Positions 30,451-43,244 of a DNA stretch of 64,000 nucleotides are shown piece by piece. A program made the position numbers and the translations under genes. The notes under the pieces were generated by a model. The model saw only the letters and a program-made list of their open reading frames with translations. It did no database searches and was not told the DNA's origin. Numbering within the stretch: position 1 is the first letter of the stretch; every line of letters starts with the position of its first letter. Source of the stretch: Zancudomyces culisetae HAW-14-8 (taxonomy: Eukaryota; Fungi; Kickxellomycota); assembly GCA_052426225.1 (NCBI GenBank), contig JBNJNM010000015.1, positions 558,001 through 622,000 of the forward strand. Direction: 5' to 3'.

Positions 30451-30759
30451 TTTTCTTGTATGTTTATGTTTATGTTTATGTTTATATTTTTCACTTTTTC
30501 ACTTTAGAACTGATTTGTATTAGAGATTTTATTTATAAATACAATCAAGTTGACAAGTAAAAAAAAAATATTTTAATATCACAAGATTCTAATTATCTAA
30601 ATCTATTAATTATCTACTACCCAGATTAAAATATTTTCTCTCCCGATTTCTCACCCTACATTACCTTGCTCAAAAAATCGTTAAACATTAAACAAGAAAT
30701 AACAGATATTAGCCTTTATAAGGTTTCAAGTTCTCTTTATTATTTTGATTTTGATTTTT

Positions 30760-33030
30760 TAAAAGATCTACTTTAGATATAATTCAACTCATTGATATTG
30801 ACTTGAAATTATTTGCTTAGTTTTATGGCAATAAGGCAATTCATATAAACTATTATTTAAGAAATGCTTTTGACTAAGAATTAATATTGGTCAAATGTTT
30901 GTATACGGATAAGCGGAGATGACAGTTTTATTAAATGGTAAAATGCATCATAAAATAAATACAAAAAACCCTAAAGAAAATACATCTCCAAAATAATGTA
31001 AACAGTTAAATCGTGTCTCCGATAGTACTTTGCAGGCTGGGATTGCTCGTAAAATGTCTGTTCAATCCTTTGTTATGCAAACTATTGACATTTTCATCCT
31101 TTAACTCTTATTTCTCGAATTTTTCCTGGACATGATTATTGCAGTCAGCTAATATATCCGCATCTAAATCTTGCCAACTGGTTGAACTTTCTTTATCGTG
31201 CCTAGCCTTAATTTCGAGTAGCTTTAATTTCGACTCGATTCTGATCTGTTTATCCATTCTCTCACTTTTCATTTTCTCAATAGCGTAGTCTTTGTAATAG
31301 GATGCGAGGAACAGGAGTATCACAGGAACCTCGATTATTAATACTTCGCTATAAGTGAAAAAAAACTTGATAGTATTGAATAAAAAGTCAAATATATATA
31401 ATACACTAGGTCTTATAAATATTATAAAAAATATGATGTTTGTTAGCCTCTTTATCGTGGTTGACGATGATCTTTTTATACTTGAAGAGGTTGCCATATT
31501 CAGTACCGGTGAAGTTTTTATTCCAGTTGTAGATATATTCTATACTTGTTAATTTCTTTTAATAAACAGATCTGAAAGGTGTTTTATCAAATATAGTGGT
31601 CTTTATTATCATCTATACAAAGATTAACAATTTTTAAAAATGGATAGTGCGTTGAATGAGCAAATTTATTGGATTTGGTAAGAAATTATAAGATGGAAAT
31701 ACTTGTTAAATGTGATACTACAAAGGCAGTATAATTGTTTATATTGTTTTTTTTGTGGTGCTAGCATTGCAGTGAAAGTTTAGCATTAGTAAATTCTTCA
31801 TCAAAGTCAGTTTTATTTATTTTGCCAGTGTTGAAAAAAGGAATTGAAAGTAAAACAACTTGAAAACTAGCTATATTTTTCAAACAACGGTCTTACATTT
31901 GGTAGATTATTATTACAGTTTGATGTAATTTATCCTGAATGCCAAGTATTTTTATTTATAGTTTCTTTTTGTTGAAATGTAAATAAGTCTTTGGGTATAG
32001 TTTTAAATTAGTAATATGCTGTGGTTTTGATCTCTTGAAACCCAAACAAACAGTTTAGTTGTAAAAATAAAGAATATTGATGTTTAAATATTAACAAATA
32101 AATACCAAAAATACTAAATAATTGAGCTTCATTTTAAATACAAGACCTAAATCTGGTTTTAAGAGATAATAGATGGTTGTAACTCTACACACTGATTTTC
32201 TTGTACGAGTTTTTTTCACTTTTCTTTACAAGTGTTATTTAATAAAGATCATTTACTTTGTATATAAACAATATAATTTCTGTATCAAGATTCAGCTTTT
32301 TATGTCAGATATCTAAAAGAAAACACATAACCTAGTTATTGATCTTAGAGTTCATGTATAAACATCCAATTACCAATATGAGTAACTCTAAACCAAAACA
32401 TAATTGGATTTTTGGTTTTATAATAGAAGCTTAATTTATGCTTATACTCAGGTTCTGTTACACACTTTTTGCATCAATTTATTTATTATTAAATTCAACA
32501 AGGTTTAGCTCACTATATCAGTCATTTAAGCTCTACAAAAATTATAAACTCACCATCTAGTTCTTTGTTCGATATACTTTCTAGGAATTCTAAATATGTT
32601 GTTGACTATAATGAATCTAATTATGGTATATATATTTACCGAATTTAAACCCCAAACACACTAGAATTTCGGTAGTCGTAATATCATTTTTTTTCTTTCT
32701 TTATATTTACCTTTTTCGTTAAATTCCCTCGTCCAACAAAACTCGATTTATCTTTTATAAGGTACCATTTCAACTAGGCCTTAACTTAAAAATTATATTT
32801 TTCGAAAATATCAGGAATTTGTCTAGAAACATTAATATCTTCCCACTACAACATATTAATGTTGTTCTTGTCAGTATTTTTCATGGAAATTATCAAAAGT
32901 ATGTATTTGTTATCACCGAATGCATATTTACTTGCAACTATTACATTTGAGGACGGAAGGAGTAAGGTAGAGGAAACAATTATATCAACACTTTTTTATT
33001 TTCTTTATAGAAGGTCACTGTTAAATAACT
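30760..33030. repeat. Module A, copy 1 (diverged direct repeat of ~40175-42790)
   Basis: Collinear matches: 30761 aaaagatctactttagat / 40177 aaaagatttactttgagat; identical 54-mer 31753-31806 / 41416-41469; gcttaatttatgct.atactcaggttctgt; aaactcaccatctag; 32800 / 42462. Confidence 0.9.
31108..31497 (-). CDS. Orphan small membrane protein, family A copy 1
   Basis: 129 aa, two hydrophobic segments then a charged helix (RIESKLKLLEIK). Paralog at 40722-41126. Confidence 0.7.
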   Translation of the reverse strand: MATSSSIKRSSSTTIKRLTNIIFFIIFIRPSVLYIFDFLFNTIKFFFTYSEVLIIEVPVILLFLASYYKDYAIEKMKSERMDKQIRIESKLKLLEIKARHDKESSTSWQDLDADILADCNNHVQEKFEK

Positions 33031-33399
33031 GTATCTGACCTTGATATTTCATCTTGCAATTTATTCTAGATGGTTTGTTTTTGAGTATTTATAACATCAG
33101 ACATATAAAATATTTAATTTTTTACAATAGTAAACGCCTAAATATACGAAACTATGAATATCTAAAAACAAATTAGCCGTGCGAGTCGTGCGAGTTTTGA
33201 TTATGTTAGCTGGTAAGTATGAAACTTTATGTCCAGCAATACACACATAAACTAAATTTTAAAGCTGCAATAACTAGACTATAAAAGTATTACTATTTAC
33301 TAATACAATACTACACTTATTATACATAGTACTCTGATAACATAAAAAAAGTATAAATACTTATAAATTCCTTGTAGAATTCTTTTTTCAAAGCTTCAA

Positions 33400-34225
33400 A
33401 AACCTTGAGAAAATTATCTTTGAGAAAAGTGTCGGACGTGGCTGGACTGGCCACGCTCCTTAGTCGGGTTTCTCATGGAATCCATCTCTCTTTGAACCAC
33501 TCCTTCAAGAAAAGAGAATGGATCACGTGACGCTTCCGGTTCTATTTCCATAGAAGTAGCTTCGGAACGATCACTATCCGAGGAGTACCGCCCCTCATCC
33601 TTGAATCTCTGGATGATGGCAGCGCGCAGATGACCCATAAGACCTGACATGAGATTTTAGTAATTTTAAACTTTTAGCCGTAGCACTATTATATGATTAT
33701 ATTAATTTTCAATAAACTTGTATTAAACAGAATCCTTCTTGTTCAATGTCTTTATTTCTTACTGTTATGAATATGTTTTAAACTACTAAAAGAGCTAAAG
33801 AGACTCCTAATGAGATCTCTTTGGCTTTTATATATGTTAATTGCTAATTTTAAAACTATTACTAATCTTATCCTATTAATATTTAATATATCCGCTATCT
33901 CTTCATATTATGCTTTGTGGTCGTCCTCATAGTTTGACTCATTTTTCATAGTTGATTATATACTCTTTAATTTAATTAAATATACTAATAATAATAAATT
34001 CTTTTTATGTCCTTATTTCATTTTGTAATTTTTCTCTTGGATTTTTGATCTGACTATTTCCTTCATTTTATGATCAGTAATAATCTTCATATTTTTGATT
34101 GTTAATGGTTAAATAAAATTCATTTCATTTTTAGATAATTGAATAATTTCCTTTGAATATTTATATATTCCCAAGAAATCGGATTAAGTTGGAATTCAAC
34201 CCAGAACACACGACAAAAGGAAACG
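33400..34225. repeat. Module B, copy 1 (diverged direct repeat of ~39340-40150)
   Basis: Shared ORF start plus upstream matches: cgtagcactatt, and aaactactaaaagagctaaagagactcc / aaactattaaagagctaaggaatcc. Confidence 0.8.
33414..33650 (-). CDS. Orphan 78-aa hydrophilic protein, family B (intact copy)
   Basis: GC-richer than its flanks. MSGLMGHLRAA...SDSDRSEATSMEIEPE; decayed paralog at 39367-39610. Confidence 0.6.
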   Translation of the reverse strand: MSGLMGHLRAAIIQRFKDEGRYSSDSDRSEATSMEIEPEASRDPFSFLEGVVQREMDSMRNPTKERGQSSHVRHFSQR

Positions 34226-34257
34226 TTTCTTGAAATTATAAAATAGAAAAAAAAAAG

Positions 34258-34725
34258 GTAGCAAGCGCACTCTGCGTTACTTCAAGATTTGCAGCCGGAA
34301 CTGCGATTTCATACACTCAGATAACCGATGCAAAAGAAGAACCTGGCTACAGCACCAGTATCTGTTATAAAGGTCATCATCACGGACTTCAACTTAATGA
34401 GCTTCATCTTGAGAATCTCTACAAATATACTAGGAAATTCAAATATTTAAAACGAGTTTTTATAGAAATCAAATAAAGAAAAAGTAACAAAACCAAATCG
34501 TTACTACAATTTACCAAGTATTTGTTTTGCGCGCCTTGATGGCACTAAGCCTGGTGCTGGTTCAGTCACGTTTTATGCTGTAATCAAATTTCTAGAAAAG
34601 GCTGTATACAAACGAAGAACTTTGCTCCCACAGCAAACGCGCAGTCTGAGCTAGATGAACAAGCAATGTCAGTATATTGGTTCAATCCAAGATTTCTTAG
34701 TTATTTAAAACTTACCAGCCTTTAA
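34258..34725 (+). pseudogene. Decayed secreted crystallin-like family C gene (5' truncated, frameshifted)
   Basis: Three frames join as VASALCVTSRFAAGTAI... / KPNRYYNLPSICFARLDGTKPGAGSVT / LCCNQISRKGCIQTKNF...MSVYWFNP. These align with PNRCY, GSGVMLLCRQRNCQGVC and SMKW of the neighbouring paralogs. Confidence 0.6.
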
Positions 34726-35438
34726 CATGTTTCATATTTATTCTCATAGACAATATTATTTAATTAAATATGATTTGGTAGTATCTATGTTATTCTATTC
34801 ATTAATACTGTGTACTTTTAGCCACTTTTATTAATATGGCTTTTTTTAAGTTTTTTATAGTATTTCATCAATCTAAATAAATAAACGAGATCAATATACC
34901 TACTTTTGTAACCGAATGATATTGGGATGATTTATTATGAACGATTATACTTTCATGTATGACTAAGATACAACCAATGTAAACCAGTTGTGCTAAAATT
35001 ATTGACAGTTCTTATTAAGCCTACCTTACCAAGGGTGAAACTAGTGTAACAGTTGATGTATTATTGAATATAAATGTTTTAATTAAATCATAGCAATCAT
35101 AATATCTTATATACTTATATTAATTCATAGAATTGGAGATCTTATACAGAGTCTAGTTGTGTGCATAAAATTAAATAAGAAAAATCGATATTTGTGCTGC
35201 CTGATTTATATAGAATAGAACTTTCACTAATGTGGTAATAGTAATCCAATGCTCAAATTTTTGTTACATCCAGGGCCAGAGATGTTTTTACAACCATCTA
35301 ATCAACCTACGAGTATGGCATGTTTGATTTTTACATTTTTTGATAACTTTATTCAAAGCAGTTTATTTAAAGATTCACTAAATATCTAAATAAGCAAAAT
35401 AAATTAAACTAATTGTTTCAATTTCTAGGATATGTTAG

Positions 35439-35870
35439 TTAAACAATCCAAGCATAGGATTTTGAATAGCCTTTATTAACATACCACCATACATCATCAA
35501 TCTGGATTCCTGGGTTTATAAAGGTATAACAGTCAGTTGAACAATTTTTATCTCTGCAAGCCATAAAGGCAACCCTTTTGACACCTGTTGCACTAATTCT
35601 TACTGATGTAAAATCGGGTGCTGCGTAACATCTATTTGGTTCGGGAGTGAAACTACCTTGATAGCCTCGATAGTAGCTGTAATGCCATAAGTTGATCTTC
35701 ATACTACCATATTTGAATATCGCCGGGCTAGCACCAAGTCCTGGAAATCCTCTTTCACTTGTTGTGTCTAGGGTTTGGTTCTGTCCGCTCTGTGGCAAAG
35801 CCGAACTAACTACCAGAGTGGTGAAAATGCTGAAAATACTGAGGATGCTGAGAATTGTTGACTTGATCAT
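35439..35870 (-). CDS. Small secreted Cys-containing protein, beta/gamma-crystallin-like (family C, intact)
   Basis: Signal peptide MIKSTILSILSIFSIFTTLVVSSALP, pro-region ending SER, and mature INLWHYSYYRG...PNRCY...S...CRDKNCSTDC...SYAW with 4 Cys. Confidence 0.8.
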   Translation of the reverse strand: MIKSTILSILSIFSIFTTLVVSSALPQSGQNQTLDTTSERGFPGLGASPAIFKYGSMKINLWHYSYYRGYQGSFTPEPNRCYAAPDFTSVRISATGVKRVAFMACRDKNCSTDCYTFINPGIQIDDVWWYVNKGYSKSYAWIV

Positions 35871-37398
35871 TTTCGGTTTTTGTATTCCTTTTTCAATGAG
35901 GTTTGGATTGCTGAAATTCAGTTGAATGTGGTGTAATGTCTTTCAATATCGAAAAAATAGTTCCTTTTATACTTTTCACCTACAATGAATATGCCACTAA
36001 CCATTTTAGTAGAAGTTAGGCTTAAATAATTGTATTGACATGTTATTATGTCCATCATCCTGAATATAATATGTGTGTATACTTCTCCCTTAGTTAATCT
36101 GATATTATTAATAGATACTTGACTTCATTGATTTACCCAATATAATGAAACTAGTATAGCTAACATCAGTATGACGAGTTTATATTTAGTAAACTTTTGT
36201 ATAATAATCTGTGTAGCGATCGATAACTAATTATAGATTTTTATAAAAATATAGTAAACTAGGACTATCTGCGAGTAACATCAACATATGAATATCACAT
36301 TGTGTGATATATTACACTGTGATTTGATAATGATTCTATTACAACTTTGCTTATTATACCAAAATGCTTTTGAATAATTCATTAGTGTAAGTGCTGCCTT
36401 CCTACAGGCTAGAAACTTAAATTTGCTACTCGTCTTTTACAATGCTCTTTGACCTTGTTAGTTAAGTGGTGTATTCTTAGGGGAGAGGTCTAAAAACGTA
36501 ATTTTAGGTAAACAACAAATTTGTAATTATTACCAATCTAATTATTAAACTCAATGACTGCCTCTTGTCGGGAAGAATGGAAATAAGGAGTAATATTCCT
36601 TGAAATTGCAGGAGCCGATCACTTTGTCGGTTTTACAACGTTTCCAAGACACCTAATGGTATGTGGGTCTGTTTTCTCTTTTTAATTGGAAGTTTGTGGA
36701 ATAGTGTTATTTTTAGACGAACTTAAAATGTCGCTCTAAATCAATCTTCTCAAGTAGTAAATCGATTTTGAATGTGATATTTATTTATTTTGATTACATA
36801 ACCTTATTACTTGTTGGGGTTAAGTGCTTTTAAGGTTCATAGTTGAGAAATCAAATAATAAAAACAGAATGTAATATTATGTAATAATTACAAATGAATT
36901 TGTATGTTAGTTTGATAAGATTATGTCAATTCAGAAAAAATTGCTTAACTATCTTATAAAGTACACTTGTTCTAGTAAACCACCACAATTTGTCTAAAAG
37001 ACGTAAAAAAGTTGTCAAAGGTTAAAATTAGAAGCTATATATTACATACTTGCAAAAATATATCACATCCTAGTACATTGACTTTCAATTCGATACTCTT
37101 GATTGTCGAACTGCTCTTCACCTCTCTAAAATTAGAATGCTGTTACAAAGTAGTTAAAAATAACACAGTTAGATATCATTAATACAAGCTAAAGATAGTT
37201 ATAGAAAAAAATTTATGATGAGGAAAAGTATGAAAGGTTCAAAGTATCACTGGAATAAAAAAATATCAACTTTGGTATTCCATCAAGCATCACAATAAGA
37301 CATACTCATACTATTATTCATCTTCATAGTCATCGTCATTTCCACACTGCATCAGTGCATTAGCCTCTCACAATTTTCTTTAAAGTCGAGTAACAAAT

Positions 37399-37758
37399 AT
37401 GGTAAAGTCAACGCTAGCACTTCTTGCGTCCGCAGTTGCCGCATTTCCAGTAAACGCCTCATTCCAAACCCTACACGCCATAATATTCTAAGACTATCGT
37501 TTTTCAGGTGCTGTCGTGAACGAATTCCAAATGGTAAAACACCAATGTTATAGCATTAACCAGGGTACCTCAGCACAATTTCTTGACCCCACAGATGGAT
37601 CAGGAGTAATGTTGTTATGTAGGCAAAGGAACTGTCAGGGTGTATGTACAGCTAACGAAAATTTTATAAGTACAGGTCTGTGGAATTTCCCAGAAGATCT
37701 CAAATCAGGCCCTCTCTCAATGAAATGGATAGCATTTGGTCAGGCTGCTAATGAATAA
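37399..37758 (+). pseudogene. Family C secreted protein with a single in-frame TAA at codon 31 (37489-37491)
   Basis: MVKSTLALLASAVAAFPVNASFQTLHAIIF*DYRFSG...HQCY...S...LLCRQRNCQGVC...SMKW. Same 4-Cys spacing as 35439-35870. Confidence 0.75.
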
Positions 37759-39339
37759 GATTTCTAACTCTTTAAATTGAAATAATCTATTACTTTAGAA
37801 CCAAGTTTAGTTGGTAGTAAAATTGTTTTTATTTATCTAGAACTTGTGCTTGAATAAAGTGTCAATCACATCACCAAAGCTGGTAAACATATCCTGCTTT
37901 GAAATGATTATAACTGCGATCTACTCACACTAAGGTAAATATATTTTAGTTTGAACAAGAATGTTTTCATACTGCAACGAGTCTACTGAGCACCATTATG
38001 TCTGGTAGGTAAAGAATATCAAATAGTATATATCAAACCTATTCCTTTCTGCCCCATTAGAAACTCCATACCCACAGGTTATTGGTTTGAAATGTTTATT
38101 TCTACTCTGAGTCAATCTAAGATAATAACACTCGCTCGACAGACACCATTCTAAAATTTTACTGTGCTCTGCTTGACCAAGGATAGTATTTTGTCTTGTC
38201 TCTTGTTTATAGGTAGAGTAACCAGCCCTTGCGACTCCTCTCCAAGGATTCCACCCACAATAAATTATTCTACGCTTGTCTCCCCCTACTCTCATTACAT
38301 TTCCCTTTTTCAGTTTTTTGATAACTTTGTGATGTATTGTTCCAAATACGCTTTCTTAACTGAAACTCATCTATTTCTGCCAAAAATTATGATCTATCCG
38401 GTTTTTTTACACCAAAAAACGACCAAGTACTGATAGTTTACTTATTACTGGTGTAGTTGAGTATCTTTTTAGAGCTTCATCCATTTAGTCAAACACCCTG
38501 AATTTAATTTTAATTTACTCAACATTGATAATATTTACTAGTTTGTTATGATTTACGCTACCCTCAATTTTGATTTTCCCTCCCTTTATATAATATACTG
38601 CAAATCTTATTCTCCTTTACAATCAAACATGTATCTCTCAACTAAAATAACAGTAATTTAAACCATTATCATCACGTACTCTCGCCTAATCAAACCATAT
38701 TAACTCAGTTCTCACTCCTATTCTGCGATTTTTTTTACTTTTTTTATTAAACAAAGACACTTAAATTAATATATTTTAGCAAACATATTACATAACAATA
38801 ATTTTTTAGGCACCAAGAATATTTATCCATGAGCAAGTGCCTAATTGTTTGTTTTCGTCTAATTCATTCCATATCTTTTCGTTATTTGTTTTTATATATT
38901 CTATCTCGTGTTAAATAATTTAAAACCCATCAAAAACTTATTAAATACGTTCTATAAACGTGTAGCGAGCAAGTGTCGTATACTGCTGCGATCAATATCT
39001 TTTGATTTTTTATGTATTCGTTCGTATCTGAGGAAACTTAATTTTATTGAAAAAGAGTATGGTTATAGTCCAGATAACTGAACGGCTTTTTAACTAAGCT
39101 TAACGAAGGTAGCTGAATATCAATTAACAATTGTGTATTATCATTCAACGGTTGTAGCAATGAATGGTAGTTCAACCCCGTTCTTTTTACAAAATCTAAA
39201 AAATGAATCCAAAATGCTATCTTATAACCAGTTCCTATAACTGGATTGATTATCCTTGTCTCACCCTTCAGATAGCATAAGAGCATTAACACCTTTTTTC
39301 TATTATTGAGTTTTCGCTTTCTTCAATTTAAAATAAACA

Positions 39340-40150
39340 GCTAGTATTTTATATCTTATACTTACTATTTGAGGTTAGTCGGGTCTACTGAGAATCACTG
39401 TCAAATGGGGTTGGGCGTAACTCCATCTTCTGTCGGTTTCTTCATTTGTAAAATGATTTGATCCACAATGTCAGCAAATGAATCATGTGATTCTTCGGAA
39501 TCTACTTTCATAGAAGTTGCTCCCGAGCAATCACTATCAGATTAATATTAGTACTCACATTTAGCTGTCTGGGTCAATGCGGTTCTTAGTTTACCCATCA
39601 AGTCTGACATGTTTGTGTGAGATTTTAATAGTTTTCTTCTTTATCTTTACACTTGATATTTATTAATTAGTCGTAGCACTATTCCAAATAAACTTCTTAA
39701 TTATTCTAAACCTGGATTTCTGTTCACAATTTTTAGTTATTTATTTTCGTATTTTTCTGATCAAAACTATTAAAGAGCTAAGGAATCCTCATCGAGTCTT
39801 CCTTTGCTTATATATATACTATTTCATTAAACCCACTAAAAACTAATTTAATTAACCTATGTTTCATATTGTTGTACTGGGTTGTTGCCTGTGGTTTCGC
39901 TCTTATATTCGTTTTCGTATCATTATTGTTCATATATTTGAATGTTGATTTACTTTAATCTTTTTAATTGCATTTTTCATTTTCTAATTTTTTTTTATTA
40001 TATAATTTTTTTTCAATTGATATAATTATCGTTGTATTTTCAGTGATCAACTTTTAATATAATTTTAGTTGATTGATTATGAGTAAATAAAATATTTATT
40101 TCAAATCGTTTAATCCCTAACTACATCGGGATACACACAACAGGACATTA
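39340..40150. repeat. Module B, copy 2
   Basis: Homologous to 33400-34225 and abuts module A copy 2. Confidence 0.8.
39367..39610 (-). pseudogene. Family B paralog with premature stops
   Basis: MSDLMGKLRTALTQTAKCEY*Y*SDSDCSGATSMKVDSEESHDSF aligns without gaps to MSGLMGHLRAAIIQRFKDEGRYSSDSDRSEATSMEIEPEASRDPF. Confidence 0.8.
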
Positions 40151-40174
40151 GTTTATATAGTTGGATTTAATATT

Positions 40175-42790
40175 TAAAAAGATTTACTTTGAGATAATTT
40201 AACCCAATTTATGTAAACTTGAATTGTTTGACTAGTTTTATGGTAATGGTTTAATAAAGAAAATAATACTACATTTAGGAAAGACTATTTGATTGATAAT
40301 GAATTCTGGTACACAAATTTTTGTACCTGGATTACTGATGATAGTTTTTATTAAAAGATGATTTGAGCTTTAAAACAATTACGAGAAATCCTAAAGAAAT
40401 TATATTTCCGAAATGTATACACTCTACGTTGTGCCTATTTTCTACTACCAAGCTTACAGAAGTGTAGTTGAACTAATTGCTAATATCACGATTATTATTT
40501 TTGCTTTAGTACTAGGTTTATTTAAAAAATAAATTCGTATTAATACTAAAATCTAAATAACGAAAAAGTAAAGTAAAAATTAACACCCGTTCCTTCTTCT
40601 CCGGTTCCTTACCCTCCTACATGTGTAAAACGTACATTATGATTGTTGTATAAAAACCACATAAGGTTGGCCGAAAATGGAAATTCATGAAATCAAGGGG
40701 TCCTTAGCGAATGTGTAAAAATTACACATTCAAATCGCCTTCGAGTTTCTCCATCTTTTGACCATCGGGATCGAGATTATCCAATAGGTTCCTTTCCAGA
40801 GCTAATGTTCTGGAATCGTTCTTATTATATTTAAGATGTAGTTCAATTAGCTTTAATTTGATCTCTTGTTTAATCCGGGATTGTTCTTGTTTACTCCGGG
40901 ATAAATATCTTCGGTATTCTAAATAAAAATACCCCAACGAAATCATCACCAGTAAAATTGGATATTCTACCGCAATTAATCCTAGTAAAAATTTCATATC
41001 CATGGTTATTAATATAAAATTGAAGATAAAAATCAACTTTAGATTTAAAAATATTACTAGTGTAAAGTTTATTAGCCACTTTATCGTGGTTGAAGATGGC
41101 CTTTTTATACTTATGATGGTTGTCATATTCTGTACCGGTGAAGTTTTTATTCCAGTTATAGTTATATTCTATCTTGTTATTTTCTATATAATAAACAAAC
41201 TTTAGATATATGCAAAATATAATGAACTTTATTGTTATATATTCAAAGTCCGATAATTTTTAAAAATGGATAAGCATTTATTCAACATCAATAAATATTT
41301 CAATGAACTCTTTGTGAACTGAATGAGCAAATGTATTGTATATGTAGAAAAAAAAGATGGAATTTATGATTCCAGTGATGTTCCAAACTTAGAATAGTTG
41401 TTTAGATTGATTTTATTGTGGTGCTAGCATTGCAGTGAAAGTTTAGCATTAGTAAATTCTTCATCAAAGACAATTTCATCTTTTTTGCAAGTGTTGAAAA
41501 AAGGAATTGAAAGTAAAAGAATTTGGTAACCAACACTATTTTTTAAACAGTGGTCTTAATTTCATATACCAATACTCAATTGTAAAATGTTTCTTTTTGT
41601 TAAAAGAAAATCATCATAGTAATTGACTATATCACTAAATTAATCAATAAATTGTGATTCTGTTTTCTTGAAAGCCAAAACAGTTTAGTTGTAAAATCCA
41701 GCGGATTGTTTATGTATTAAACAGCTATTAATAAATACCAAATAATGCTATGTGTTCAGCTCTATTGTAGCTACAAATCCCAAAGCCTAGTTGAACAGTT
41801 ACTACAGATGGTTATACCCCTAAAAGCATATTTGATCTTACGACTTTTTTTTGTTCCCCTTTACAATTGCTATTATTTTGAAGAACCATTTACTTTGTAT
41901 AAAAACAAATAGTTTATGTTTTGAAATACAGTTCTTTATGGTAAATACCCCCCAAAAAACATATAACCTAGTTACTGCTCTAGAGTTAATGCAAACATCC
42001 AGTTACCGATAATAGTAATTCTAAACCAAAACATAATCGACTTTTCGGTATGATTCTATATGCTTAATTTATGCTGATACTCAGGTTCTGTCATGCTTTT
42101 TTTACAATACCAATTTATTCATTATTACATTCAACAGGGTTTAGCTCACTATAGAGATTGTTATTAAGCACTACTGGAAAGAGAAAACTCACCATCTAGC
42201 GCTCTATGTACCATCGATTCAAATAGTCTTTAAAAAAAGTACTTTATGCTTCATTTGAAGATCACAAAAATTTCTATACCTCTTTTCTAGGTTCAGATCT
42301 CGAAACTATTACTTCTCTTTTGATCCGAGTAGGACATAACTTTTCTTTATATCCCACTAATATTTAGCTGTTTATTTTGTCAAGTTATTTTGTTGAACAA
42401 AATTAGATCAGCATTCTCAAATATAGTCATTCATTCAACTGTTATATACAAAATATTGATTTTCCGAAAATACCAGAAGTTGGTCTAGTCAACATTATAT
42501 TGAATTATCGCGTTATATACTGTAGTTCTTGAGTAGTGATTTTGTTTCTGCAAAATTGGATGTGTGAATATTCAATGTAACTTTCATCACTAATATATGA
42601 ACAACTACAGTATTTATGGATGGGAGAATGGAGTGGGATAGTTTGAAGGAGATGGTCGTATATGAAGGCAGTTATTTTTAAATTTGAACAGCGAATATGC
42701 CTATTAAATAGTTTCATAACTTTGTTAATAATCATTTTTTTCTTTCTTTTTCTTTTATGATGTATTTTTTCGGCTACTGTTAAAAATAAT
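40175..42790. repeat. Module A, copy 2
   Basis: Direct-orientation homolog of 30760-33030 with extra sequence at about 40420-40700. Confidence 0.9.
40722..41126 (-). CDS. Orphan small membrane protein, family A copy 2
   Basis: MTTIISIKRPSSTTIKWL vs MATSSSIKRSSSTTIKRL; VEYPILL vs IEVPVIL; RIKQEIKLKLIEL vs RIESKLKLLEI. Confidence 0.7.
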   Translation of the reverse strand: MTTIISIKRPSSTTIKWLINFTLVIFLNLKLIFIFNFILITMDMKFLLGLIAVEYPILLVMISLGYFYLEYRRYLSRSKQEQSRIKQEIKLKLIELHLKYNKNDSRTLALERNLLDNLDPDGQKMEKLEGDLNV

Positions 42791-43244
42791 CCCCCCAAAA
42801 ATAATAAAGCTCACTTTACTTGGAAGCAATAAAACGGAAATATATCTACTCGTTAGTATTTGTATCAAATCCGAAATAAGGAGCATCGTGTTAAAATGAA
42901 AATAACATACTTTTAATTATTAATTATTAACACTGGTGTTGTAGTTGGTGTTGGTATAGCAAATATTCAGATTTTTCGTATGTCTAAAATAAAACTAGTA
43001 TTGTTTTAGCCATATTGAACAAATAGACGAAAATGCAATCACAAATAATATTAATACTGATGTTGCATAATGCCCATCCGCTCTAAATCTCCAAATCACA
43101 ACACTTCATAAATTATACTAATTGGAAAAAAGATAACAAAGTATAATTGCATCTAGGTGGCGAATCACTTTTCATTTATTTCACAACACTCAACTCAGGC
43201 TTTAAATAAAAGTAAAGTGATAAATTAATTGAAAAGTAGAAATA

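What the first reader, a model, noticed from the sequence alone, without database searches (positions are those of the whole stretch)
30700..42800. 12-kb accessory island: secreted crystallin-like gene cluster embedded in a relic array of two orphan modules (candidate effector/toxin plus partner system)
Seen: there are no conserved genes between 30.5 and 43.2 kb. The order is A(-) B(-) Cpsi(+) C(-) Cstop(+) Bpsi(-) A'(-). A encodes a ~130-aa two-TM protein, B a 78-aa hydrophilic protein, and C a secreted 4-Cys protein. Gene order is mirror-like, but the A and B copies are direct repeats. The right end of B copy 1 (~34200 acacacgacaaaagga) matches the B-A junction of copy 2 (~40132 acacacaacagga). 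Inference: this is a remnant (B-A)n tandem array interrupted by the C cluster, under birth-and-death turnover (3 of 7 genes disabled). Small secreted crystallin-fold proteins include the Williopsis killer toxin, Streptomyces SKLP and plant MiAMP1 (established). A secreted antimicrobial/effector linked to a small membrane immunity or driver protein is therefore a testable hypothesis, not a demonstrated function.
Basis: partly seen in the sequence, partly recalled or inferred. Interest (0 to 1): 0.8.

Follow-up and report, generated by a model that had tools for sequence, protein, structure and literature searches.

The report
Secreted crystallin genes among retrotransposon debris
This 12-kb stretch of a mosquito-gut fungus (Zancudomyces culisetae) holds one working and two broken genes of a large, lineage-specific family of small secreted crystallin-fold proteins, flanked by retrotransposon end-pieces and a dispersed repeat rather than by a toxin-plus-partner system.

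Summary

- **B and Bpsi** are solo LTRs of Ty3/gypsy retrotransposons. The gag start codon lies inside the LTR, which explains the 78-aa "ORF". B (33430-34211) has TG..CA ends and a 4-bp target duplication. A 98%-identical paralogous segment and the published Z. culisetae assembly both show the empty site.
- **A and A'** are two old copies (about 70% identical) of a dispersed 2-2.7 kb repeat found at 22 loci. It carries a fast-evolving, unannotated ORF for a two-TM plus coiled-coil protein. Only 5 of the 22 copies lie near a C gene, and all 5 sit in paralogous copies of this same block.
- **C** is intact. Residues 55-143 are predicted with pLDDT above 90 as a single beta-gamma-crystallin domain (Z 9.6; WmKT 6.8, MiAMP1 6.7).
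- **Cpsi and Cstop** are broken members of two sister subfamilies.
- **The C family** has at least 71 loci, more than half within 100 kb of a contig end and often next to LTRs. Outside this species it was found only in Smittium.

The crystallin fold and birth-and-death turnover are supported. The (B-A)n array and the toxin/immunity pairing are not. First readers of this scan noted the same family on other pieces of this genome.

The parts
30659..32560 (-). A-module copy 1: dispersed ~2 kb repeat with ORF A (31108-31497, 129 aa) and about 1 kb of conserved non-coding DNA upstream of it
   Evidence: 77% identical to C15:276476-278426 and about 70% to copy 2. The upstream part has stops in all frames. 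The ORF family has 22 loci.
31108..31497 (-). ORF A: conserved N-terminal Ser/Thr-basic motif, two hydrophobic segments and a coiled-coil tail. Unannotated, fast evolving.
   Evidence: Family alignment A2 has invariant positions and in-frame indels. dN/dS is 0.4-0.8. KD hydropathy. No database protein matched. A 270-nt hypervariable tract separates the two strains.
32468..39473 (.). Segment duplicated at C12:1748991-1755179 (98-99% identical). The C12 copy lacks the B LTR.
33430..34211 (-). 'B': solo LTR (782 bp) of a Ty3/gypsy element. The gag ATG at 33650 lies inside the LTR, and the ORF runs 16 nt into flanking DNA.
   Evidence: TGTCG...CGACA termini, AAAG target duplication and an empty site in the C12 paralogue. 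Empty site also in the published assembly. At least 17 copies at 93-99% share the same boundaries. Gag N-terminus homology.
34234..34722 (+). Cpsi: decayed member of the His-rich 'C2' subfamily, with no ATG, several frameshifts and a lost Cys
   Evidence: Four colinear HMM matches in three frames, E 9e-10 to 3e-3. Intact counterparts sit at the same position in the blocks C15:279515 and C11:712879.
35439..35870 (-). C: intact 143-aa secreted protein with a signal peptide, a ~30-aa disordered linker and one beta-gamma-crystallin domain (residues 55-143) with 4 invariant Cys
   Evidence: AF2 pLDDT above 90 for residues 55-143. Z 9.6, rmsd 2.1 A over 78 residues to gamma-D crystallin. An unbiased search gives crystallins in nearly all of the top 29 rows. 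Identical in the published strain. It is the only gene annotated in the island.
37399..37758 (+). Cstop: 'C3' subfamily member with one in-frame TAA at codon 31, otherwise intact, with a canonical F-x4-F-x-G Greek-key signature
   Evidence: The same stop is present in the C12 copy and the published strain. An intact paralogue is at C11:717610-717969 (L042).
37996..38295 (.). Copy of a ~255-bp dispersed repeat; the 99-aa ORF is fortuitous
   Evidence: 39 genomic hits. Apart from this locus and its C11 duplicate (98% identical), all but one weak partial hit carry stops. No Pfam, Rfam or tRNA match.
39400..40143 (-). 'Bpsi': degenerate solo LTR of a second Ty3/gypsy subfamily, with TG..CA ends and no visible target duplication
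   Evidence: 79% identical to both LTRs of a full-length element at C10:1466562-1472610, which encodes PR-RT-RNaseH-INT
40152..42881 (-). A-module copy 2 with ORF A' (40722-41126, 134 aa)
   Evidence: 76% identical to C5:4003-6353.

Best explanation
The interval is an internal, repeat-rich accessory block of the Zancudomyces culisetae genome. Its only functional cargo recognisable here is one member (C) of a Harpellales-restricted family of small secreted single-domain beta-gamma-crystallin-fold proteins. That family has at least 71 loci and is enriched near contig ends.

The ancestral block was A-module, then C2(+) C1(-) C3(+), then an A-module. It has been copied as a whole or in part to at least four other places. 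In this copy C2 has decayed, C3 carries a stop, and C1 is intact.

C1 is mosaic. Its promoter and signal peptide belong to the block lineage. Its mature domain is closest to a gene at another locus.

'B' and 'Bpsi' are solo LTRs of Ty3/gypsy retrotransposons that landed in or beside the block. A and A' are copies of an independent dispersed repeat carrying a small membrane/coiled-coil ORF. They are not a dedicated partner of C.

Inferred mechanism for C: it enters the ER through its signal peptide. In many paralogues, though not in C itself, a dibasic site just before the first strand suggests Kex2-type removal of a pro-region. The product is released as a compact disulfide-stapled Greek-key domain that acts outside the cell, in the larval hindgut lumen. 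The most likely action is binding a microbial or host surface component, as an antimicrobial or interaction factor. Activity is not shown.
For: - **Organism:** 97.6-99.2% identical to GCA_001969505.1 contig LSSK01000175.1.
- **B:** gag N-terminus of a 1576-aa PR-RT-RH-INT polyprotein whose ATG lies inside the LTR. At least 17 copies at 93-99% share the same ends. TG..CA ends, target duplication and two independent empty sites.
- **Blocks:** window 32468-39473 matches C12 at 98%; 35773-39822 matches C11 at 90%. The A-modules match C15:276k, C5 and C11 at 75-80%. The C2-C1-C3 triad is repeated at C11:712-718k, and C2-C1 at C15:279-283k.
- **C fold:**
- **Family size and position:** 71 hits, at least 37 within 100 kb of a contig end (plus contig lengths).
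- **LTR association:** a gag-N-terminus/LTR hit lies within 5 kb of 25 of the 45 best C hits, against about 2.5 expected (counted by eye).
- **Taxonomic range:** a profile search of 1.84 billion representatives gave 31 hits. The ten clusters whose source was looked up were Z. culisetae (8), Smittium mucronatum (1) and S. culicis (1).
- **Selection on C:** dN/dS 0.3-0.5.
- **Mosaic C:**
- **Dibasic sites:** present before strand 1 in roughly a third of the sequences examined.
- **A and C independence:**
Against: - No expression or activity data exist for any element.
- The signal peptide is judged by eye only.
- C itself lacks the dibasic site.
- A-modules do flank the triad in two blocks (this window and C11) and adjoin C2 in three. 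A functional or mechanistic link between the A-module and the triad is therefore not excluded.
- The LTR-C association is inflated by duplicated blocks.
Confidence: 0.75

Rival explanations
1. A secreted crystallin-like toxin or effector (C) is genetically linked to a small membrane immunity or driver protein (A) and a hydrophilic partner (B), within a relic (B-A)n tandem array.
For: A-modules flank the C triad here and at C11:710-724k. An A-module adjoins C2 at C15:276-280k. A is a two-TM protein.
Against: - B is an LTR with an empty site.
- 17 of 22 A loci have no C nearby, and the 5 that do are copies of one block.
- Most C loci have no A.
- No significant A-like match (best E 0.017) in the two Smittium loci that hold C relatives.
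- A is absent from all protein databases searched.
Confidence: 0.05
2. The C family is structural or developmental rather than antagonistic, for example a spore-wall, holdfast or stress-stage component. Protein S, spherulin 3a and the Neurospora abundant perithecial protein are microbial beta-gamma-crystallins of this kind.
For: The best structural matches are canonical lens and microbial beta-gamma-crystallins (Z 8-9.6). Protein S scores 8.0, APP 7.9 and spherulin 7.9, all above the killer toxin at 6.8.
Against: - About 70 rapidly diverging copies near contig ends, with many pseudogenes, is unusual for structural proteins.
- No N/D-N/D-x-x-S/T-S calcium motif is seen in C (read directly from the sequence).
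- About a third of the sequences examined have pro-region dibasic sites, as in secreted toxins or effectors.
Confidence: 0.25
3. The A-modules are the functional ends of a composite duplicative unit. Long direct repeats would mobilise or amplify the C2-C1-C3 triad by recombination, which would explain why whole blocks recur.
For: Direct A-modules bracket the triad in two blocks. The block recurs at four or more places.
Against: - The two modules are only about 70% identical.
- No terminal repeats or target duplications were found.
- The C12 copy starts inside a module and ends inside an LTR, with retroelement sequence on both sides. This fits TE-mediated ectopic recombination better.
- Most A-modules carry no triad.
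Confidence: 0.12
4. ORF A is not a gene at all but a fortuitous frame in a non-coding repeat.
For: It is not called in the published annotation or in any database. dN/dS is near 1 for several close pairs. The non-coding DNA upstream is better conserved than the ORF body.
Against: - 18 of 22 copies keep an open frame at 30-60% amino-acid identity.
- Indels are in frame.
- The architecture is conserved, including an invariant Glu in the second hydrophobic segment.
- dN/dS is 0.37-0.64 for the diverged pairs.
Confidence: 0.3

Closest known systems
Beta-gamma-crystallin superfamily, single-domain members (lens gamma/beta domains, Ciona crystallin, Protein S, spherulin 3a, Neurospora APP)
   Same: Predicted two-Greek-key domain: Z 9.6-7.9, rmsd 2.1-2.7 A over 76-81 residues, covering the whole mature domain. 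Motif 1 has the W-x4-Y-x-G signature and each motif has its Ser (sequence).
   Different: No sequence-level match to any Pfam crystallin model or PDB chain. In motif 2 the two signature aromatics are replaced by an invariant Cys pair (C105, C110). There is no canonical calcium motif. The protein is secreted with a pro-region and belongs to a family of about 70 copies.
Williopsis mrakii killer toxin WmKT/HM-1 (1wkt), MiAMP1 (1c01) and Streptomyces SKLP (1f53)
   Same: Small secreted single-domain crystallin-fold proteins. Z 6.8, 6.7 and 4.0 respectively. From my own knowledge, HM-1 is made as a prepro-protein.
   Different: The structural match is weaker than to ordinary crystallins. C has 4 Cys, not the 10 or 6 of those proteins. 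There is no sequence similarity. No activity is known.
Cladosporium fulvum apoplastic effectors Ecp4/Ecp7/CfCE44/CfCE72-CTR (predicted beta-gamma-crystallin fold; bioRxiv 10.1101/127746)
   Same: Fungal small secreted Cys-containing proteins with a predicted crystallin fold, no calcium motif, a kexin site in one member, and lineage-specific genes prone to pseudogenisation.
   Different: These come from an ascomycete plant pathogen and share the MiAMP1 Cys spacing. Their copy number is small. No sequence relation was detected.
IPSE/alpha-1 of Schistosoma mansoni eggs (4el6)
   Same: Top Foldseek hit (E 6.8e-4, 22% identity; Z 7.5). A secreted crystallin-fold protein of an animal-associated eukaryote.
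   Different: A different Cys pattern, a dimeric glycoprotein that binds IgE. The similarity is shared fold only.
Solo LTRs of Ty3/gypsy (Metaviridae) retrotransposons
   Same: B and Bpsi have TG..CA termini. B also has a target duplication, many copies with identical ends and an empty site. Bpsi is related to the LTRs that flank a PR-RT-RH-INT polyprotein.
   Different: The gag start codon and about 68-75 codons lie inside the LTR. From my own knowledge this arrangement is known from Ty1. As a result every solo LTR displays a short ORF.

Membership tests
Beta-gamma-crystallin superfamily | Domain of two Greek-key motifs forming a beta-sandwich | tested here: met
   AF2 model has pLDDT above 90 for residues 55-143. 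Z 9.6, rmsd 2.1 A over 78 residues. Of 48,161 chains, nearly all of the top 29 are crystallin-fold proteins.
Beta-gamma-crystallin superfamily | [YFW]-x4-[YF]-x-G signature and downstream Ser in each motif | tested here: inconclusive
   Motif 1 has W62..Y67.G69 and S89. Motif 2 has C105..C110.(G/T)112 and invariant S138, so the aromatics are replaced by Cys (alignment A1).
Beta-gamma-crystallin superfamily | Match to a curated sequence model (Pfam Crystall and relatives, MiAMP1) | tested here: not met
   No crystallin family at E up to 10 for 14 members. No crystallin chain in the PDB profile search.
Yeast/Streptomyces killer-toxin-like crystallins (WmKT, SKLP) | Sequence relation or shared disulfide pattern, and killing activity | tested here: not met
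   Shared fold only (Z 6.8 and 4.0). 4 Cys rather than 10. Activity cannot be tested with these tools.
Ty3/gypsy solo LTR (for B) | TG..CA termini, target-site duplication, multicopy with fixed ends, empty site | tested here: met
Ty3/gypsy solo LTR (for B and Bpsi) | Homology to LTRs that flank a PR-RT-RNaseH-INT polyprotein | tested here: met
   Bpsi is 79% identical to both LTRs of the C10 element. B's ORF is 50% identical to that element's gag N-terminus. Domain order from Pfam.
Toxin/effector plus immunity-partner gene pair | Partner gene consistently adjacent to the toxin gene across independent loci | tested here: not met
   5 of 22 A loci lie near C, all in one block family. Most of the 71 C loci have no A.
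Toxin/effector plus immunity-partner gene pair | Physical or functional interaction of the two products | not tested
   No binding is claimed, so no complex prediction was run. This needs experiments.

The most novel reading that the evidence does not exclude
The crystallin-fold family is the main diversifying secreted arsenal of a mosquito-gut commensal. On this reading it comprises about 70 genes near contig ends, Kex2-processed and disulfide-stapled. The proteins would antagonise competing gut microbes or engage the larval hindgut surface. The family would be diversified by LTR-mediated ectopic recombination and domain swapping between paralogues. It would be an early-diverging-fungus counterpart of effector or killer-toxin repertoires.
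Probability: 0.3. Interest if true: 0.65.

Novelty: new member of a known kind. Interest (0 to 1): 0.4.

Why it matters
Harpellales live in the guts of disease-vector larvae, and almost nothing is known about the molecules they secrete there. A family of about 70 secreted crystallin-fold proteins is a concrete candidate set for symbiont-microbe or symbiont-host interaction. The family is restricted to this lineage, concentrated near contig ends and annotated only as hypothetical proteins. It was not mentioned in the Harpellales comparative-genomics paper I checked, and no held paper combines 'Zancudomyces' with 'crystallin'.

The specific claim of a toxin-immunity island does not hold, so this particular locus is ordinary: a gene-family fragment in repeat-rich DNA.

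Tried and rejected
- **Pfam:** nothing for A, A', B, C or Cstop, and nothing useful for 14 family members at E up to 10.
- **PDB sequence profile search:** no crystallin chain.
- **Word-based protein search with A:** no protein at all.
- **ESM Atlas look-up for A:** not available.
- **AF2 of A:** low-confidence all-helical model (pLDDT 67, pTM 0.29), so no fold search was run on it.
- **Coding potential of the conserved DNA upstream of A:** stops in all frames.
- **An intron as the explanation for the Cstop stop:** the only GT..AG candidate shifts the frame (read). The stop is shared by three copies.
- **A-modules as LTRs of a giant element:** no pol remnants between them, and the paired A ORFs in the 7.8-kb repeats at L046, L047 and L052 are different subfamilies.
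- **Rfam and tRNA scans of the island:** nothing.
- **Donor of the hypervariable A tract:** not found among the fetched paralogues.
- **Synteny with Smittium:** could not be tested.
- **Complex prediction:** not run, because I do not claim that A binds C.


Full report
**Organism and setting.** The window is C15:558001-622000 of a 27.1-Mb, 25-contig eukaryotic assembly. The region aligns at 97.6-99.2% to contig LSSK01000175.1 of the published Zancudomyces culisetae assembly GCA_001969505.1. It is therefore another strain or assembly of this mosquito-gut fungus (Harpellales).

**Checking the layout.** Self-comparison shows a direct duplication, 30736-32560 against 40152-42199 at about 70% with stretches at 77-93%, plus a short B/Bpsi match. 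Bpsi is found by tblastn at 39425-39610 with two stops. Cstop (37399-37758) is a complete frame with one in-frame TAA at codon 31. Cpsi is real but badly decayed. A profile of its subfamily matches four colinear pieces in three frames across 34234-34722 (E 9e-10, 1.6e-6, 1e-3, 3e-3). It has no ATG, and a family-invariant Cys is lost.

**What B is.** The B ORF has at least 150 tblastn matches in the genome. About 16 are 93-100% identical but only over residues 1-74 to 1-76. One hit lies inside a 1576-aa open frame. That frame is a Ty3/gypsy polyprotein with zinc knuckle, aspartic protease, RT, RNase H and integrase.

The two LTRs of that element are at C10:1466562-1467309 and 1471866-1472610. 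The gag ATG (1472070) lies inside the 5' LTR. Every solo LTR of such elements therefore carries a short 'ORF' that runs into whatever lies beyond.

In the window, the repeat with fixed ends is 33430-34211, with at least 17 copies at 93-99%. It starts TGTCG and ends CGACA, and is flanked by a duplicated AAAG. The 98-99% identical paralogous segment on C12 has the uninterrupted target. So does the orthologous site in the published strain. B is thus a young, strain-polymorphic solo-LTR insertion.

Bpsi (39400-40143) is a second solo LTR. It is 79% identical to the C10 element's LTRs, has TG..CA ends and shows no target duplication.

**What A is.** A has 22 genomic matches, 18 with open frames. 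The proteins share four features:
- a conserved N-terminal Ser/Thr-basic motif;
- two hydrophobic segments;
- an invariant Glu in the second segment;
- a variable coiled-coil tail.

dN/dS is 0.37-0.64 for the diverged pairs and near 1 for close pairs. Each ORF travels with 1-1.5 kb of conserved but non-coding upstream DNA. No protein like A exists in the 5.8-billion-sequence collection, and the published annotation has no model for it. AF2 gives only a low-confidence helical model.

Only five A loci lie within 8 kb of a C-family hit: this window twice, C15:277k, C11:723k and C5:4k. All five are copies of the same block. The other 17, including a 7.8-kb repeat with two A-type ORFs present at five places, have none.

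**Block history.** Several matches define the block:
- Window 32468-39473, minus the B LTR, matches C12:1748991-1755179 at 98-99%.
- Window 35773-39822 matches C11:715970-720034 at 90%.
- Window 35773-37304 matches C15:282496-284049 at 79%.
- The A-modules match C15:276k, C5:4k and C11:710k/722k at 75-80%.
- The same three subfamilies recur in the same order at C11 (C2 at 712879, C1 at 715604, intact C3 at 717610) and partly at C15:279-283k.
- The C12 copy begins inside an A-module, ends 74 nt inside LTR2, and is bordered by retroelement sequence on both sides.

The 'mirror' order is therefore an old block (A-module, C2, C1, C3, A-module) plus later LTR insertions. It is not a B-A array.

**C is mosaic.** Its upstream region and signal peptide (36542-35773) follow the block lineage. 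Its mature domain (35705-35445) is closest to a gene at C11:1136862, at 76% nucleotide and 54% amino-acid identity.

**What C is.** C has a hydrophobic N-terminus with small residues before a likely cleavage site (judged by eye). A linker of about 30 residues follows, predicted disordered. Then comes a domain predicted with pLDDT above 90.
- Foldseek's top 48 listed PDB matches are all beta-gamma-crystallins; the best is IPSE/alpha-1 at E 6.8e-4.
- VIA-align gives Z 9.6, rmsd 2.1 A over 78 residues to gamma-D crystallin.
- In a search of 48,161 representative chains that does not rely on Foldseek, nearly all of the top 29 are crystallin-fold proteins. WmKT scores Z 6.8, MiAMP1 6.7 and SKLP 4.0.
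- In the family alignment, C81, C105, C110, C114, S138 and W141 are invariant.
- Motif 1 keeps the aromatic signature (W62..Y67.G69). In motif 2 the two aromatics are replaced by C105 and C110.
- No Pfam or PDB sequence match exists.

**The family.**
- tblastn finds 71 loci. Thirty lie in the first 100 kb of a contig. At least seven more lie within 100 kb of a known far end (lengths).
- By my count, 25 of the 45 best hits have an LTR/gag-start hit within 5 kb, against about 2.5 expected. Duplicated blocks inflate this number.
- A profile search of 1.84 billion representatives found only 31 proteins. The ten clusters whose source was looked up were Z. culisetae (8), one three-domain protein of Smittium mucronatum and one weak hit in S. 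culicis.
- Two Smittium loci with C relatives show no significant A-like match (best E 0.017) and no gag sequence.
- Roughly a third of the sequences examined have KR/RR just before the first strand; C does not.
- dN/dS is 0.3-0.5.
- The library holds no paper that mentions Zancudomyces together with crystallin, and the 2018 Harpellales comparative-genomics paper does not mention crystallin. A precedent for fungal secreted crystallin-fold effectors is C. fulvum Ecp4/Ecp7.

**Verdict.** Of the interpretation, the crystallin fold and the turnover hold, but the module array and the partner system do not. The locus is a fragment of an undescribed but structurally familiar secreted-protein family, set in retrotransposon-rich DNA. 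The function of C remains inferred.

First readers of this scan flagged the same family near the ends of other pieces of this genome. I confirmed that distribution only through.

Noticed in passing
window 31032-31304: Between this genome and the published strain, about 45 differences (17%) are packed into a 270-nt tract. The tract covers the 3' half of ORF A plus about 75 nt downstream. More than 900 nt on either side are identical. Both alleles keep an open frame (129 and 118 aa). It looks like a gene-conversion tract or an old polymorphism, and the donor was not found.
   Followed up: partly
window 37489-37491; L040 (C12 copy); L026 (C11:5205k): The in-frame TAA of Cstop sits at the same codon as a TAA in a paralogue that is only 78% identical and has also lost its ATG. 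An intact paralogue (L042) has a sense codon there. This is either a recurrent hit or spread by conversion.
   Followed up: partly
window 35705-36542: The C gene is mosaic. Its promoter and signal peptide are homologous to the C1 genes of the paralogous blocks. Its mature domain is closest to a gene at C11:1136862.
   Followed up: partly
L046, L047, L052 (C8:1088-1098k, C7:966-976k, C20:26-36k): A repeat of about 7.8 kb is present at five or more places at 90-93% identity. It contains two different A-type ORFs 4.8 kb apart, which bracket two ORFs of 170-340 aa without any Pfam match. In L047 a DIRS-like RNase H/tyrosine-recombinase remnant lies next to it.
   Followed up: partly
window 37996-38295: The 99-aa ORF belongs to a dispersed repeat of about 255 bp (39 hits). 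Only this locus and its C11 duplicate keep the full frame open; all but one of the other hits carry stops. The nature of the repeat is unknown.
   Followed up: partly
genome-wide: All of the roughly 17 near-identical copies of the B-type LTR appear to be solo. No pair 5-6 kb apart was seen, although one insertion is polymorphic between strains. An active full-length source was not identified.
   Followed up: no
L054 7858-8748 (Smittium mucronatum): This C-family relative has three tandem crystallin-like domains in one 296-aa protein. The Z. culisetae members seen here have a single domain.
   Followed up: no
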